From Ruditapes philippinarum (Eukaryota), in NCBI RefSeq assembly GCF_026571515.1, contig NW_026863152.1, positions 186,001 to 250,000 on the forward strand: 64,000 bases of DNA, read 5' to 3'. The stretch's first letter is position 1; every line of letters starts with the position of its first letter. Made by a program: the position numbers and the translations under genes. Shown here one piece after another: positions 57,989 to 63,981 of this stretch. The notes under the pieces are model-generated. The model worked only from the letters and a program-made list of their open reading frames with translations. It searched no databases and was not told the origin of the DNA.

Positions 57989-60900
57989 TCAAAATGCTAA
58001 ACCAATGAAAAATCCACCAACAAAACTTCCAGCCAAAAACATGTTCTCTTGTGCAAATCTTCGTAACTGAAAGGAAAACAAAAGAAAATATTAAAATATG
58101 CTAAGTCAAGACCCACGTAACTATACTGAAAAGGAAAAATTCTGATTGGATAAATATTTTGGCAATGGTCTTCATATAACTACCGGTACATAATATTCAG
58201 TTTAATTTGATTTATTACACAATATTTGACAGGTACTTGAAACAAACTATTTTAAATGTTCTATATTGGCCTTATACTAAAATAAGCCTTAATGTATAGT
58301 ATATAGCCCATAAAGAACATTAAAAATAGTTTGTTTCATGTACCTGTGAAATATTGTGTCAACAAAATTAAAATAGTTTAAGCTTAATAGCCTGCTGGCA
58401 GGAACAGATTCTACCCATGTCATCTGATCACTATCTGCAGTGCACTGTTTACAATTTGCTAATGTATATTTTGAAAATTTTCCCCAACAATGATGAACAA
58501 GTTTTGACCAGCTTCAAAGATAGCTGTGCAAGTACTAGTATATCTTGACCAGCACTGGTCACAAGGGAAGAATAAGTTGCCACCAGGTGGCAATGGGGCT
58601 AAGTAGCATCAACACTGTAAGGTCATATTGCAACTTTTCAGCTTTACTGACTAAGGAAGACCACAGGTGACATTTTCTGTATAATTTCAAACTAGCCTTT
58701 CCGGACATGAGTTTTGCTTTTATCAGATTGATTTGTATATCACTTTAATAAAACTCAAACATCCTTATTTAACATCTTAGTTTTAATTGATTGTAAAAAG
58801 CTCTGCCATAATGATATAGCAAATAAATAAAACAATAATTCCATACTCAAAATCGATACACTCAGGTTATCCATTTCTATGAGGCAACAGTTGTGCTTAC
58901 TAAAACAACCAATTTTGGCGAGGATCAAGGAGGAGGCTGAAAATACAACCAATTTAAACAGATGACATAAATCGCCAATCTGCTAATGATAACCTTGCTT
59001 ACTTACGTTATCGACTAGCTGAGGAAACTGTCTGTTCGCTTCACGCTGTACTTTACGTTTGGCCTGTGTCACTTCCTTATTGACTTTGGACCAATTTATC
59101 TGTATGTAACCTTGATGTTGAGCTATCTGAAATTTATATTTGAGACGTTTGAATAATTCTGTCTGGTGCTTGTCTTAAGCAACACGTGAGCAGATGGAGT
59201 AAAATAATTCTTCAAAAATATTACATTAAAGGCACATTAAGCCTTAGAAATTAATTAAATTTCTTTCTGTAGAATGGGCAAACACATGTTTCAATTTTTA
59301 GGGCCCAAAACAAAAAGGATTTTTACGTTTCAATAAATTATCGATAATTAAATATATTTCAATATAAGTTATTTCTAAGTTTATTAAAATAACATACGGT
59401 ATTCGGACTAAAACAGTTCTGGACATGAAATAAAAGACAAAAAGTTTGATCCCACCAAACTTCATATTAAACGAATAAGTTAATAAATATGGAAAACAAA
59501 TATTCAAACATCAGAATCCACAATTTTTACTCAAGTAAAGCGAATGGTTGTAAGTTTCAAAGCATTAACTAAAAGGGTCGTTAATAAGTGTAAGTGACAA
59601 CATTTTTGGTTTATCTCGGCGGTCGATCCACCTTACTTGCTTTCCTGGATATCTAACCAGTAATTGCCAATTTCTCAGCATGTGACCTTCTATTAACGCG
59701 ATATAATTTCTGGTTGAATGTGGAAAGACCATTAGACTCTATGTCAGAGGTCAACTGTCACAATTTATGCCTCGTCTAAGGATCAAAGCAGCAACCGTTA
59801 GATAACCAAACCGATGCTCTTTATTGAACTGAGCAGGCAAACATTATTAGCTCTATCTTATTGTTAAAACCATTAATGTGGTTTTTGTAGTGATTTGAAT
59901 GAGGTGCTAGCAGATTTTCTGATGAGAAAAAAGCTATAGAAAACAAAGACAAGAGGGCCATGATGGCCCTGAGGTCGCTCACCTGTATATAGCCCCCCCC
60001 CCCCCCGGGCCAATTTTACCCAAGGGCTTTTATTTGTTTATTTGAACAGACTTGGTAGACACCCATAAGAAGATGTTTCATGCTAAACATCTAAGTTCTA
60101 GCTCATTGGGTTTTTTAAAAGAAGATTTTTTAAGTTTTTACTATACACATATAGTTAAAAACAATGACACCCCTGGGGCAGGGCCAGTTTTGACCCCCGG
60201 GCTTTTATTTGAACAAACTTTGTAGATATTTACTTAAAGATGTTTCATGCTTAATATCTAAACTCTAGCTATTTGGGTTTTTTCAAAGAAGATTTTTAAG
60301 TTTTTGCTATACACATATAAGGAAAATCAATGACCCCCGGGGCGGGGCCAGTTTTGACCCCAGGGCTTTTATTTGAACATACTTGGTAGACACCCATTAG
60401 AACATGTTTCATGCTAAATATCTTAGCTCTAGCTCTTTGGGTTCTTTAAAAGAAGATTTTTTAAGTTTTTACTATATGCATATAGGGAAAATCAATGACC
60501 CCCTGGGGCGGGGCCAATTTTGACCCCAGGGCTTTTATTTGAACAAACTTGGTAGACATTCACTAGAAGATGTTTCATGCCAAATATCTTAGCTCTAGCT
60601 CTTACGGTTCTTTAAAAGAAGATTTTTTTAAGTTTTTACTATATGCATATAGGAAAAATAAATGACCCCCCGGGGCGGGGCCAATTTTGACCCCAGGGCT
60701 TTTATTTGAACAAACTTGGTAGACACTCACTAAAAGATGTTTCATGCCAAATATCTTAGCTCTAGCTCTTTGGGTTCTTTAAAAAAAGATTTTTTTAGTT
60801 TTTACTATATGCATATAGGGAAAATTTTTGACCCCCTGGGGCAGGGCCAATTTTGACCTCAGGGCTTTTATTTGAACAAACTTGTTAAACACTCATTAGA

Positions 60901-63900
60901 AGATGTTTCATGCTAAATATCTTAGCTCTAGCTCTTTGGGTTCTTTAAAAGAAGATTTTTTAAGTTTTTACTATATGCATATAGGGAAAATCAATGACAC
61001 CCTGGGGCGGGGCCAATTTTGACCCCAGGGCTTTTATTTGAACAAACTTTGTAGACATTCACTAGAAGATGTTTCATGCCAAATATCTAAGCTCTAGCTC
61101 TTACAGTTCTTTAAAAGAAGATTTTTTAAGTTTTTACTATATGCATAAAGGGAAAATCAATGACCCCCGGGGCGGGGCCAATTTTAACCCCAGGGCTTTT
61201 ATTTGAACAAACTTGGTAGACACTCACTAGAAGATGTTTCATGCCAAATATCTTAGCTCTAGCTCTTTGGGTTCTTTAAAAGAAGATTTTTTAAGTTTTT
61301 ACTATATGCATATAGGGAAAATCTATGACCCCCTGGGGCAGGGCCAATTTTGACCCCAGGGCTTTTATTTGAACAAACTTGGTAGACACTCACTAGAAGA
61401 TGTTTCATGCCAAATATCTTAGCTCTAGCTCTTTGGGTTCTTTAAAAGAAGATTTTTTAAGTTTTTACTATATGCATATAGGGAAAATCAATGACCCCCT
61501 GGGGCGGGGCCAATTTTGACCCCAGGGCTTTTATTTGAACAAACTTGGTAGACACTCATTAGAAGATGTTTCATGCCAAATATCTAAGCTCTAGCTCTTA
61601 GGGTTGTTTAAAAGAAGATATTTAAAGATTTTTCTTTCGGTTGCCATGGCAACCAGAGTTCTGCATGGAATTAAATTCTTTGAACAATTTTTAAAGGTGA
61701 CCACCAAAGGAACATTCCTGTGAAGTTTGGATGAAATTGGCTCAGTGGTTTATGAGGAGATGTCACTTAAAGCAAAAGTTTACGGACGGACGCCGGACGA
61801 AAAGCGATCACAAAAGCTCACCCTGTCACTTTGTGACAGGTGAGCTAAAAAACTAGGAAATTTTAAAGCAGCCTTCAGCTTTTTAAAGGTTATTTATGTT
61901 ATTTTTAGATAAATTGTTTCATATAATTGTCAAATCAAAAGAAGAAAGGTGGTCTAATCTACTGGTCAACCCTCTATATTTAAATTAATAAAGCAGACTA
62001 TTTGAGCCGTGTCACGACAAAACTAACATAATGGGTTTGCGACCAGCATGGATCCAGACTAGCCTGCGCATCCGCGCAGTCTGATCAGGATCCATGCTGT
62101 TCGCTATCAGTTTCTCTACTTGCTATAGCGTTTGTAAGCGAACAGCATGGATCCTGATCAGACTGCGCAGATGCGCAGGCTGGTCTGGATCCATGCTGGT
62201 TGCAAACCCATTATGTTGGTTTTGTCATGACGCGGCTCATTTGTTCTATTTTTAGCAACAAACATCACTGTCGTGTTATAAATAGCTCACTTGGATGCTG
62301 TTTTGAGGAAGGCTAACACATAATTGTTTTTCAAACTGAAGGCGGCTTTAAGAATACAGTTGTGGTCCAACAAGCAGAAAGCTATAAATTAATAATGTAG
62401 TAAACTAAGAAAAAAACGTTAAAAGTTTAATAGTTAAGAACTAAATAAAATTCTGTATAAACCAATTGTTCTAACAGTGGGTGGTACTATCACCCCACAA
62501 CCATCTTATAGTGGTTGTTAATATAACCCTTCACTAATCTTTAAGACTGTCTATCCTACAACTGTCTTACAATGGCTAGTAATATAACCCTATAACCATC
62601 TTACAAAGAGGGGTTATATAACCCTACAACCGTCTTAACAGCTAATGGCAATATAATCCTACAACCATCTTACAATGGGTGACAATATAACCCTACAGCC
62701 ATTTTACAGTGGCTGGTAATAATAAATATAACCCTTTAACTGTATATCATTGACTGGTAATATAACCGTATAACTGTATTTCAGTTAATTGTATAATAAC
62801 CCTATAAAAAGTTGGTGAATATAACCTCAGTGTTCGAAATTAGCAGTAGTCCCATAGCCCGACTTCTAAATTTCTCCTCGGGCTACCAACTTTTCACAGT
62901 AACAAGCCCGACCAGGCTACTGTATTTTCAGAGACAATATGAACAACTGTTTTGAACAAATGAATCGTGCTAGTGAAATGTCTTTTGGGCTAGTGAATAT
63001 TCCAATCTGATAGTACGACCAGCCTAGTGGATTCAAATCCGAATTTCTTACACTGTAACCTTACAAACATCATACAAAGAGTGTAATTATATAATCCTAA
63101 AACCATCTAACAGTGACTGGTAAAATAATCCTACAGTCATTTTACACTGGCTTGTAATATAAAACCACACAGTTATTATACATTGGCTGTTTATATACAT
63201 TGTAACCCATACAACAGCAGAAATTGGAACACACTCCTTGAAGTTAGTAACAGATTTACGTAACATGTAACTTGCAAATTGAAACAGAACAAGAACAACA
63301 AGTACCTGTATAAGAAGCACTGTCGTGCCTAAACTGCAGGCAGCTATTTTGCCAACTTTAATAAACAAATAGCCTGAGAACCTGTAAAATAAGTTTGGAA
63401 GGTTATAAAGCTTGGTCATAAAAACATTTGTTAGAGCCATTAAAAGCAGCTTGGCCACATTTTCTCACTTTAAAGTTATTCACAGTGAAAGGCAGTTTTA
63501 TAATTATGTAAAAAAATAAAATAACAACCAATTTCTGGGTCTTGGGTTGTTATTTACCATTATTATCCCTAAAACTGACACAATGTTCTGTAAAAAGTAC
63601 TGTATTTTATGGAAAATTGCATATAAAACATCTTACAAAAATATTACACGGACAAACAGGGCAGTCCCACTATCATTTGAATCAATGGTATGCTAAATTT
63701 CATTATAAATTCCACAATCATGCCTGTTTTAGCAAGCATATTGTTATTCAGTTATTCATACAGTTAATCTTCGAAATGCAATACATTGTATATATATTCT
63801 GATTTGTATGTCATTACTTGAATGCAAAACACTGTGAAACACTTTAAGGGTGGGTGAAATGTGGCCAAGCTTCGAGTATGGGACATGACTGTGATAATGT

Positions 63901-63981
63901 ATTACCCTAATTAGTAGAAGTGAAGCTCCAATACTGATGGCAACTGATTTACCAACCTTCACAAACAGATAGCCAGATGCA
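57989..63981 (-). CDS. FUNDC1: FUN14 domain-containing protein (FUNDC1/2), 3' part; alternative exons 63981-63906 or 63381-63306, then 59126-59007 and 58066-57989; 5' exons lie beyond the window
   Basis: GYLFxKVGK..LLIQ, IAQHQGYIQINWSKVNKEVTQAKRKV, RFAQENMFLAGSFVGGFFIGLAF* match FUNDC1 [48 protein letters not shown]; GT-AG sites; phases consistent. Confidence 0.93.
58204..58369. repeat. ~165-bp imperfect inverted repeat in the last FUNDC intron
   Basis: ACACAATATTTGACAGGTACTTGAAACAAACTATTTT vs AAAATAGTTTGTTTCATGTACCTGTGAAATATTGTGT. Confidence 0.85.
59949..61848 (-). mobile_element. Second copy of the 166-bp-repeat HINE element (~10 units), intronic in FUNDC
   Basis: Same termini, microsatellite and unit as 23129-24720. 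Confidence 0.9.
62003..62239. mobile_element. Foldback MITE, same family as 19542-19765
   Basis: TGAGCCGTGTCACGACAAAA...TTTTGTCATGACGCGGCTCA. Confidence 0.9.
62828..63055. mobile_element. hAT-like MITE (CAGTGT..GAAATT TIRs) inserted in a degenerate ~35-40-bp tandem array (62480-63140)
   Basis: CAGTGTTCGAAATT / AATTTCTTACACTG; TAACCT on both flanks (partial TSD). Confidence 0.65.
63306..63381 (-). CDS. FUNDC1: FUNDC alternative exon B (76 nt): FSGYLFIKVGKIAACSLGTTVLLIQ
   Basis: TTTTACAG acceptor, CAG|GTACTT donor, phase 2 to phase 0. Confidence 0.9.
63448..63871 (-). other. Intronic long-range stem (arms 63830-63871 and 63448-63487) between the duplicated FUNDC exons
   Basis: AGCTTGGCCACATTT (15/15), TTAAAGT and TTCACAGTG blocks are mutually complementary. 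Confidence 0.8.
63906..63981 (-). CDS. FUNDC1: FUNDC alternative exon A (76 nt): ASGYLFVKVGKSVAISIGASLLLIR
   Basis: AATTCCAG acceptor, AGG|GTAATA donor, same length and phases as exon B. Confidence 0.82.

What the first reader, a model, noticed from the sequence alone, without database searches (positions are those of the whole stretch)
63306..63981. Tandemly duplicated, probably mutually exclusive transmembrane exon in the mitophagy receptor FUNDC1/2
Seen: two homologous 76-nt exons 524 nt apart, both with AG/GT sites, phase 2 to 0 and no stops. They share 15 of 25 residues, and 8 of those 15 use different codons, which points to an old duplication with both copies under protein-level constraint. 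No other FUNDC exons lie between them, so this is not a whole-gene duplication. Because 76 is not a multiple of 3, including both or neither shifts the frame. Known: this segment corresponds to [23 protein letters not shown] of vertebrate FUNDC1 (end of TM1, KVGK loop, TM2). Inference: the gene makes two isoforms with swapped membrane helices. Exon A has Arg in place of the conserved Gln, and would give Cys instead of Trp at the junction if the upstream exon ends in TG. This could tune mitophagy by tissue, sex or hypoxia state. I know of no described mutually exclusive exon in FUNDC genes, but I cannot search for one.
Basis: partly seen in the sequence, partly recalled or inferred. Interest (0 to 1): 0.88.

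Follow-up and report, generated by a model that had tools for sequence, protein, structure and literature searches.

The report
Clam FUNDC1 mutually exclusive exon pair
The Manila clam's only FUNDC1-type mitophagy receptor gene has two alternative copies of one 76-base exon, used one at a time, so it makes two proteins that differ in a membrane helix hairpin; the switch is real and shared with other clams, but what it changes in function is untested.

Summary
On the minus strand, exon A (63981-63906) and exon B (63381-63306) are both 76 nt, run from phase 2 to phase 0, and have AG/GT splice sites. They share 15 of 25 residues, and 8 of those 15 use different codons.

- **Gene:** it is the only FUN14 locus of Ruditapes philippinarum. 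A 42-kb second copy, probably a haplotig, also carries it.
- **Upstream exon:** The junction residue is therefore Cys with A and Trp with B.
- **RNA evidence:** spliced contigs from two studies show E1-A-E3 and E1-B-E3 at exactly the predicted junctions. No A-B joint is listed. A makes up roughly 32% and 63% of the total.
- **Frame lock:** A plus B gives a stop in B. Skipping both gives TGA at the junction.
- **Other species:** RefSeq X1/X2 models differing only in this block exist in Ruditapes, Mercenaria, Mya and Dreissena, and a metagenome contig carries both exons in tandem. B resembles the single exon of other molluscs. A is a faster-evolving derived copy that always ends in Arg.
- **Prior description:** no paper found describes it.

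It is a new member of a known kind. Functional difference and regulation are untested. The scan's index holds no FUNDC1 or FUN14 note on other DNA; its only note here covers the intron stem on this same stretch.

The parts
63906..63981 (-). Exon A (2a), 76 nt, phase 2 to 0. This is the derived copy: it ends in Arg, and its first base T makes the junction codon Cys.
   Evidence: Joints E1-A and A-E3 appear in RNA contigs of runs X1 and X4. It is 100% identical in the second genomic copy. It is present in RefSeq isoform XP_060561551.1.
63306..63381 (-). Exon B (2b), 76 nt, phase 2 to 0. This is the ancestral-type copy: it ends in Gln, and its first base G makes the junction codon Trp.
   Evidence: Joints E1-B and B-E3 appear in runs X1 and X4. 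75 of 76 bases are identical in the second copy, and the one change is synonymous. It is present in RefSeq isoform XP_060561550.1. It resembles the single exon of other molluscs.
63382..63905 (-). Intron between A and B, 524 nt, with GT..AG ends.
   Evidence: The predicted fold is more stable than all 100 shuffles, z = -2.94. It is about 86% identical between the two genomic copies.
63831..63871 (-). 5' arm (in the RNA) of a long inverted repeat. It starts 34 nt after the donor of exon A.
   Evidence: There is a 15-nt perfect core plus an imperfect extension of about 25 nt. It is paired in both the MFE and the centroid fold. In the second copy the core carries C>U, which keeps a G.U pair in the sense RNA.
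63448..63487 (-). 3' arm (in the RNA) of the inverted repeat. It ends 66 nt before exon B.
   Evidence: The whole arm-to-arm segment occurs nowhere else in the 1.4-Gb assembly except in the second copy.
59007..59126 (-). Exon 3, 120 nt, phase 0 to 0. It is the common acceptor for A and B and encodes the loop between helices 2 and 3.
   Evidence: PF04930, 28.2 bits; joints from both A and B, and on to exon 4.
57989..58066 (-). Exon 4 coding part: the last helix and the TGA stop.
   Evidence: The E3-E4 joint is seen in X1 and X4.

Best explanation
Exons A and B are a tandem-duplicated, mutually exclusive exon pair in the single FUNDC1-type (FUN14) gene of Ruditapes philippinarum. The gene has five coding exons: E1 (just outside the window), A or B, E3 and E4.

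**Shown:**
- Each mature mRNA carries exactly one of the two exons. This gives two 139-residue proteins that differ only in a 26-residue block.
- A is a major form, not a trace.
- Both exons are kept intact in a second genomic copy whose introns have diverged.
- The same pair exists in Mercenaria, Mya, Dreissena and one unknown bivalve.
- The frame penalises the wrong combinations. A plus B runs into TAA at the eighth codon of B. Skipping both makes TGA at the E1/E3 junction.

**Inferred:**
- The 26-residue block covers the end of helix 1, the KVGK turn and helix 2.
- Nonsense-mediated decay clears the mis-spliced forms.
- One duplication happened in a common ancestor of Venerida and Myida. 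B kept the ancestral sequence and A diverged.
- The two proteins differ in how the membrane hairpin packs or which partner it meets. The positions that consistently separate A from B (residues 12, 16 and 19 of the block) fall on one face of an ideal helix, and the block always ends in Arg in A.

I put about 0.5 on a real biochemical difference between the isoforms. A predicted stem in the A-B intron may add to the exclusion, but that is not shown.
For: - **Anatomy:**
- **One locus plus a second copy:**
- **Junctions:** all five predicted junctions were found to the base in contigs of runs X1 and X4, which come from different studies. In L012 coordinates they are E1-A 4350>5281, A-E3 1542>4275, E1-B 3774>5281, B-E3 1542>3699 and E3-E4 561>1423. 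All skipped stretches have GT..AG ends on the minus strand.
- **Depths:** 87.9 (A) against 188.8 (B) in X1, and 379.5 (A) against 201-249 (B) in X4.
- **Second copy:** exons are 98.7-100% identical while introns are 85-94% identical.
- **Isoform pairs in four species:**
- **Double inclusion:** Mercenaria isoform X3 is the frameshifted A+B form.
- **Tandem arrangement elsewhere:** contig L013 carries A-like and B-like 76-nt exons in tandem, with AG/GT sites.
- **Distribution of the A type:** the Arg-ending type was seen only in Venerida, Myida and L013, among about 60 FUN14 proteins from molluscs and outgroups.
- **Single origin of A:** A exons fall on one side of a branch, support 72/75, with 0 of 500 shuffles as clustered.
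- **Both are good FUN14 domains:** 77-89 bits against a cut-off of 22.5.
Against: - The two informative runs are recorded only as 'RNA?'. They are Logan contigs, which cannot give reliable ratios and drop rare forms.
- 16 weaker joints were not shown, so a low level of A-B joining in Ruditapes is not excluded.
- The two raw-read RNA runs had almost no reads on the coding exons and added nothing.
- No functional or tissue data exist.
- The structure model is poor (mean pLDDT 50), so the helix boundaries are soft.
- The exon tree rests on 25 columns.
- Genomic DNA of other named species could not be fetched.
Confidence: 0.88

Rival explanations
1. Exon A is a decaying duplicate that is included by splicing noise. 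Only the B isoform matters.
For: - A evolves faster than B between species: 12-19 against 19-24 identical residues of 25.
- A scores lower against the FUN14 profile in three of four species.
Against: - A accounts for roughly a third to two thirds of junction depth in two runs.
- It is base-for-base identical in the second genomic copy while the introns differ by 6-15%.
- It is intact, 76 nt long and Arg-ending in six species or contigs.
- A separate Logan transcript (P0008) carries it.
Confidence: 0.04
2. The pair is real, but the two proteins are biochemically equivalent. Both exons are retained only because regulation was partitioned between them and the frame lock makes loss costly.
For: - The residues invariant across the family (KVGK, and the Ala and Gly of helix 2) are kept in both exons.
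- Most differences are conservative hydrophobic or small-residue swaps.
- There is no functional evidence either way.
Against: - A has fixed differences kept across species for a long time: the terminal Arg in 6 of 6, and no Ile after KVGK in 6 of 6.
- Under pure equivalence these positions would be expected to wander.
Confidence: 0.3
3. Mutual exclusion is enforced mainly by RNA structure. The roughly 40-nt stem loops out the middle of the A-B intron and leaves too little room between the donor of A and the branch point of B, so A cannot be spliced to B.
For: - The stem is in both the MFE and the centroid fold, and no shuffle folds as well.
- A 15-nt perfect complement is far beyond chance in 524 nt.
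- The segment is unique in the genome, so it is not a multi-copy element.
- The second copy keeps the stem, with a change that is G.U-compatible only in the sense RNA.
- 34 nt lie before the stem. Branch-like motifs lie 16-44 nt after it.
Against: - In contig L013 the strongest inverted repeat of the A-B intron has its 5' arm 568 nt from the donor of A, which is a different geometry.
- The introns are not alignable between the two species.
- Looping out an intron more often helps splicing than blocks it.
- A double-inclusion model exists in Mercenaria.
- Two alleles are too few for a covariation test.
Confidence: 0.2
4. The A-type exons arose by separate duplications in each clam lineage and look alike by convergence.
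For: - The exon tree is weakly resolved: 25 columns, support 72/75.
- Scallops show that this gene can evolve alternative exon pairs independently, at exon 3.
Against: - The derived states, the order A then B and the 76-nt length are the same in Ruditapes and L013.
- The first ten intron bases after A are identical in the two.
- A exons group together, and 0 of 500 label shuffles are as clustered.
Confidence: 0.05

Closest known systems
Mutually exclusive exons born by tandem exon duplication (general class; for example the events reviewed in PMC8373072)
   Same: Adjacent homologous exons of equal length and phase. Exactly one is used per mRNA. The result is a substituted protein segment of the same size. 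Both copies are conserved.
   Different: None in kind. This is a new gene for the class. The length is not a multiple of three, so wrong combinations are frame-penalised.
Oyster alternative oxidase with duplicated exon 10 (Crassostrea virginica, PMC5589949)
   Same: A bivalve mitochondrial membrane protein with two alternative copies of one exon. One copy is conserved across taxa and the other is derived. In the oyster the derived form becomes dominant under air exposure.
   Different: There the last exon is duplicated, so the choice is made through alternative 3' exon use. Here an internal exon pair is flanked by shared exons. No stress response has been measured for the clam FUNDC1 pair.
Vertebrate FUNDC1 and FUNDC2 paralogues
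   Same: Two versions of a FUN14 three-helix outer-membrane protein in one organism (from general knowledge).
   Different: Vertebrates have two whole genes. The clams have one gene that varies only 26 residues while keeping the same N-terminal LC3-interacting motif, loop and last helix.
Scallop FUNDC1 isoforms that swap exon 3
   Same: Same gene family, same phylum, and isoform pairs that differ in one exon-sized block.
   Different: A different exon is swapped: the loop between helices 2 and 3, 39 against 40 residues, so there is no frame lock. It was seen in Mizuhopecten, Pecten, Ylistrum and Argopecten but not in clams. Ruditapes has one exon 3.
Steric-hindrance exclusion (alpha-tropomyosin exons 2/3) and competing-stem exclusion (Dscam-type docking and selector sites)
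   Same: The outcome is an exclusive choice between neighbouring exons. A strong intronic stem is present here.
   Different: The linear intron is 524 nt, far above the steric limit. No docking and selector pair was identified, and the stem is not conserved in position in L013. These mechanisms are recalled from the literature and were not tested here.

Membership tests
FUN14 / FUNDC1-type protein | A FUN14 domain (PF04930) above Pfam's cut-off | tested here: met
   Both isoforms cover profile positions 2-92 of 92, at 87.5 bits (B) and 82.2 bits (A) against a cut-off of 22.5. The genomic exon 3 alone scores 28.2 bits.
FUN14 / FUNDC1-type protein | An N-terminal LC3-interacting motif (aromatic-x-x-Leu after acidic residues) ahead of the helices | tested here: met
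   Exon 1 encodes acidic residues followed by F-E-V-L, conserved across the mollusc orthologues. Binding to Atg8/LC3 was not tested.
FUN14 / FUNDC1-type protein | Three membrane helices | tested here: inconclusive
   The AlphaFold2 model gives helices 33-58, 60-78 and 123-138, plus two loop helices. Mean pLDDT is only 50.
Mutually exclusive exon pair from tandem exon duplication | Adjacent homologous exons of the same length and phase with their own splice sites | tested here: met
   Both are 76 nt, run from phase 2 to 0, have AG/GT sites, share 15 of 25 residues and lie 524 nt apart.
Mutually exclusive exon pair from tandem exon duplication | Transcripts that join each copy to the same upstream and downstream exons | tested here: met
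   The E1-A, A-E3, E1-B and B-E3 joints appear in contigs of two runs from two studies. RefSeq isoforms agree.
Mutually exclusive exon pair from tandem exon duplication | Forms with both exons or neither are absent or rare | tested here: inconclusive
   No A-B joint or E1-E3 joint is among the listed joints, but 16 weaker joints were not shown and contigs drop rare forms. The depths of A and B sum to about the depth of the shared joints. Both wrong forms hit early stops. Mercenaria has an A+B model.
Mutually exclusive exon pair from tandem exon duplication | Both copies conserved in related species | tested here: met
   Isoform pairs exist in Mercenaria, Mya and Dreissena. Both exons are present in contig L013. 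Both are intact in the second Ruditapes copy.
Exclusion by incompatible U2/U12 splice sites | One intron of the pair has U12-type consensus sites | tested here: not met
   All donors and acceptors are GT..AG with U2-like context, and no ATATCC-type donor is present.
Exclusion by steric hindrance | The donor of the first exon lies within about 50-60 nt of the branch point of the second | tested here: not met
   The linear distance is about 465-500 nt. It would be met only if the predicted stem acts as a shortcut, which is untested.

The most novel reading that the evidence does not exclude
The A/B choice is a regulated switch, hundreds of millions of years old, that changes the membrane-embedded face of the mitophagy receptor. 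Burrowing clams would then run two mitophagy settings from one gene, for example normoxia against hypoxia or air exposure. In Ruditapes, which inherits mitochondria from both parents in a sex-linked way, it could also bear on removal against retention of sperm mitochondria. Scallops reaching a similar two-isoform state through a different exon would then point to repeated selection for FUNDC1 isoform diversity in bivalves.
Probability: 0.15. Interest if true: 0.7.

Novelty: new member of a known kind. Interest (0 to 1): 0.42.

Why it matters
FUNDC1 is studied almost only in mammals, where variation comes from phosphorylation and from a separate FUNDC2 gene. These clams instead vary the helix 1 - turn - helix 2 hairpin by exon choice while keeping the LC3-binding end. 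That amounts to a natural experiment on what the membrane part of the receptor does.

The derived copy has been kept across Venerida and Myida with fixed differences, so it is likely to matter. The animals concerned tolerate hypoxia well, and one of them has unusual mitochondrial inheritance.

The event class is common, automatic annotation already carries the isoforms, and nothing yet shows a functional difference. The value is that of a good, testable lead rather than a surprise.

Tried and rejected
- **Raw-read RNA runs X21 and X23:** almost no reads fell on the coding exons, so they gave no junction counts. Only the Logan contig runs were informative.
- **The look-up of encoding contigs:** Genomic loci of Mercenaria, Mya, Dreissena, Mactra, scallops and oysters could not be inspected, so dN/dS and intron comparisons with named species were not possible.
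- **Exon-only protein search with the exon B open frame:** it found only close matches. Full-length searches then used the database's own records (P0003, alignment A3). The only joining was a frame check inside a script.
- **Third copy of the exon:** a weak hit at 62914-62885 contains a stop and does not extend. Rejected as chance.
- **Second exon 3 in Ruditapes, as in scallops:** none found.
- **Inverted repeat as a multi-copy transposon:** no other copy exists in the genome and no target-site duplication was seen. A single old insertion cannot be excluded.
- **Cross-species support for the stem:** not found in L013.
- **Structure model:** too weak to map residue contacts. No fold search was run on it.
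- It was repeated from stored records.
- **Literature:** no paper links FUNDC1 to mutually exclusive exons as such. The co-occurrences are generic method text, and the bivalve papers that mention FUNDC1 do not treat its splicing.
Full report
**What is in the sequence.** The feature lies on the minus strand. Exon A runs from 63981 down to 63906 and exon B from 63381 down to 63306. Each is 76 nt, preceded by AG and followed by GT, and open in the frame that starts in phase 2 and ends in phase 0. The intron between them is 524 nt.

**The gene.**
- The window is G000:C11639:186001-250000.
- A PF04930 scan of the whole 1.4-Gb assembly finds FUN14 exons only here and on a 42-kb contig, C2985.
- Reading beyond the window end shows the first coding exon. 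Its ATG is at window-equivalent 66007 and its last base at 65862. It encodes an acidic stretch with an F-E-V-L motif and ends ...GGA TG|gtaaat.
- Downstream lie exon 3 (59126-59007, 120 nt) and exon 4 (58066-57989 including the TGA stop).
- A tblastn of database isoforms against window-equivalent 40000-78000 finds only these five exons. There is no third copy of exon 2 and no second exon 3.

**Second genomic copy.** C2985 carries the whole gene in the same order. Introns are 85-94% identical and differ by the presence of tandem arrays. Exon A is 76/76 identical. Exon B is 75/76 identical, and the single change is synonymous. Exons 3 and 4 have one change each, and all splice sites are kept. 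Whether C2985 is a haplotig or a recent duplicate, both alternative exons are protected relative to their surroundings.

**RNA evidence.** I laid four runs on the shorter copy (L012 = C2985:12500-18200), because it holds all five exons within the 6,000-letter limit.
- Logan contigs of X1 and X4, from different studies, contain joints at exactly the predicted bases: E1-A (4350>5281), A-E3 (1542>4275), E1-B (3774>5281 after the stated 2-base shift), B-E3 (1542>3699) and E3-E4 (561>1423). All skipped stretches have CT..AC ends on the plus strand, which is GT..AG on the gene strand.
- In X1 both A joints have depth 87.9 and both B joints 188.8. In X4 the A joints have 379.5 and the B joints 201-249. 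The sums are close to the depth of the shared exon contigs.
- A is therefore about 32% of the total in X1 and about 63% in X4.
- Contig depth is a poor measure, and the samples are coded, so this shows only that A is a major form and that the ratio varies.
- No A-B or E1-E3 joint is among the listed joints. However, 16 weaker joints were not shown and contigs drop rare forms.
- The runs are labelled 'RNA?'. Five canonical spliced joints and exon contigs at depths of hundreds show that they are RNA.
- The two raw-read runs had next to nothing on the coding exons and are uninformative.

**Frame logic.** Including both exons reads exon B out of frame and hits TAA at its eighth codon. Skipping both makes TGA across the E1/E3 junction. 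Both stops lie far upstream of the last exon junction, so nonsense-mediated decay is expected. This is an inference from the general rule and was not tested. All sites are GT..AG of the U2 type, so U2/U12 incompatibility is excluded. The linear intron is far too long for simple steric exclusion.

**Identity and relatives.**
- A protein search with the open frame around exon B returned a RefSeq protein of Ruditapes philippinarum encoded on the 42,472-bp contig.
- Searching with that database record and listing its clusters shows that RefSeq already holds both forms. On the window's contig these are XP_060561550.1 (X1, exon B) and XP_060561551.1 (X2, exon A). The second contig has an equivalent pair.
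- X1/X2 pairs that differ only in the same 26-residue block also exist in Mercenaria mercenaria, Mya arenaria and Dreissena polymorpha.
- Mercenaria isoform X3 is the A plus B double inclusion, read out of frame and truncated. This shows that its genome has A followed by B, and that the wrong form can be made.
- A marine metagenome contig from an unknown bivalve (L013) carries an A-like exon (310-385) and a B-like exon (1403-1478). Both are 76 nt with AG/GT sites, in the order A then B. Its first ten intron bases after A are identical to those of Ruditapes.
- A Logan transcript from yet another species (P0008) carries an A-type block.

**Which copy is ancestral.**
- Among about 60 FUN14 proteins from bivalves, gastropods, cephalopods, a chiton, a brachiopod, annelids and chelicerates, the block ends in Gln (rarely Lys) and has a hydrophobic residue after KVGK, like exon B.
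- The Arg-ending type was seen only in the Venerida and Myida species and in L013.
- In a tree of the 25-residue blocks the six A exons form one side of a branch (support 72/75, with 0 of 500 label shuffles as clustered). They have longer branches.
- Between species, A-A identity is 12-19 of 25 against 19-24 for B-B. Even so, Tyr4, Val9-Gly10-Lys11, Gly18 and Arg25 never change in A.
- The simplest reading is one duplication before Venerida and Myida split, with B conserved and A diverged but constrained. From published bivalve time trees as I recall them, that split is a few hundred million years old. I did not check the date here.
- Absence of A in other orders rests on annotated proteins only, not on genomes.

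**What is swapped.**
- Both isoforms are full FUN14 domains.
- The AlphaFold2 model is weak (mean pLDDT 50). It places helices at 33-58 and 60-78 with the break at the Gly of KVGK.
- The positions that consistently separate A from B are 6, 12, 16, 19 and 25 of the block.
- On an ideal helix (100 degrees per residue), positions 12, 16 and 19 lie within about 40 degrees of each other. The invariant Ala14, Gly18 and Leu22 lie on another face. This is geometry, not a model result.
- It suggests that one surface of helix 2 is exchanged while the small-residue packing face is kept. In A an Arg then replaces Gln at the end of helix 2.
- From the mammalian literature as I recall it, the KVGK turn faces the intermembrane space and its first Lys is implicated in OPA1 binding. 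Both exons keep that Lys, but A changes the residue right after the motif.
- None of this was tested.

**The intron stem.** The A-B intron holds an inverted repeat with a 15-nt perfect core and about 25 further imperfect pairs (window 63831-63871 and 63448-63487).
- It is paired in the MFE and the centroid fold, and no shuffle of 100 folds as well (z = -2.94).
- The segment is unique in the genome apart from the second copy. There the core has a C>U change that keeps a G.U pair only in the sense RNA.
- It starts 34 nt after the donor of A and ends 66 nt before B, with branch-like motifs 22, 35, 50 and 59 nt before B.
- I found this before consulting the scan's index, which holds a first-stage note on the same stretch with the same idea (s1-807819).
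- In L013 the strongest inverted repeat has a different geometry and the introns do not align.
- I rate a structural role in exclusion at about 0.2.

**Literature.** No paper in the held library describes alternative exons of FUNDC1. The co-occurrences of the terms are generic method text, and the five papers with FUNDC1 and bivalves do not treat splicing. The nearest described case is the duplicated exon 10 of oyster alternative oxidase, where the derived variant becomes dominant under air exposure (PMC5589949). The Manila clam multi-tissue, two-sex RNA-seq study does not mention this gene. It offers the data for the obvious test (PMC9803972). The scan's own index lists many other candidate mutually exclusive exons in this genome. 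These are unchecked notes, but they suggest the class is common here.

**Verdict.** This is a real, expressed mutually exclusive exon pair shared by venerid and myid clams, in the single FUNDC1-type gene. It is already modelled by automatic annotation but not described. It is a new member of a well-known kind. The functional claims (tissue, sex or hypoxia tuning) remain open. Interest is moderate.

Noticed in passing
Proteins P0014/P0018 (Mizuhopecten), P0013/P0024 (Pecten), P0015/P0017 (Ylistrum), P0010/P0011 (Argopecten); alignment A1: Scallop FUNDC1 isoform pairs share one exon 2 block but swap the whole exon 3 block, the loop between helices 2 and 3 (39 against 40 residues). This looks like a second, independent alternative exon pair in the same gene family. 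Ruditapes has only one exon 3.
   Followed up: partly
window 60037-61633, and window-equivalent 64811-65598 (L011 3038-4634 and 7812-8599): Tandem arrays of 166 bp (9.6 copies) sit in the B-E3 intron, and arrays of 164 bp (4.8 copies, 98% alike) sit in intron 1. Both are missing at these places in the second copy C2985, which makes its gene about 3 kb shorter. A related array lies elsewhere on C2985 (9131-10872).
   Followed up: partly
G000:C2985:11646-18093 against window 57005-66174: A 42-kb contig repeats the whole gene at 85-96% identity. RefSeq annotates it as a separate locus with its own X1/X2. It is probably an uncollapsed haplotype, so the gene count of two in the annotation is likely inflated.
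   Followed up: partly
window 63000-63060: About 60 nt at this spot match dozens of other contigs at 93-98% identity. This is a short, high-copy interspersed repeat in the B-E3 intron.
   Followed up: no
window-equivalent 68000-73000 (L009, upstream of the gene on the minus strand): Long open frames of up to 186 residues lie here with no FUN14 similarity. They are possibly a transposable element or a neighbouring gene and were not examined.
   Followed up: no
Protein P0037 (Mercenaria isoform X3): A RefSeq 'uncharacterized protein' model is in fact the A plus B double-inclusion transcript of the FUNDC1 gene, read out of frame after exon A.
   Followed up: yes
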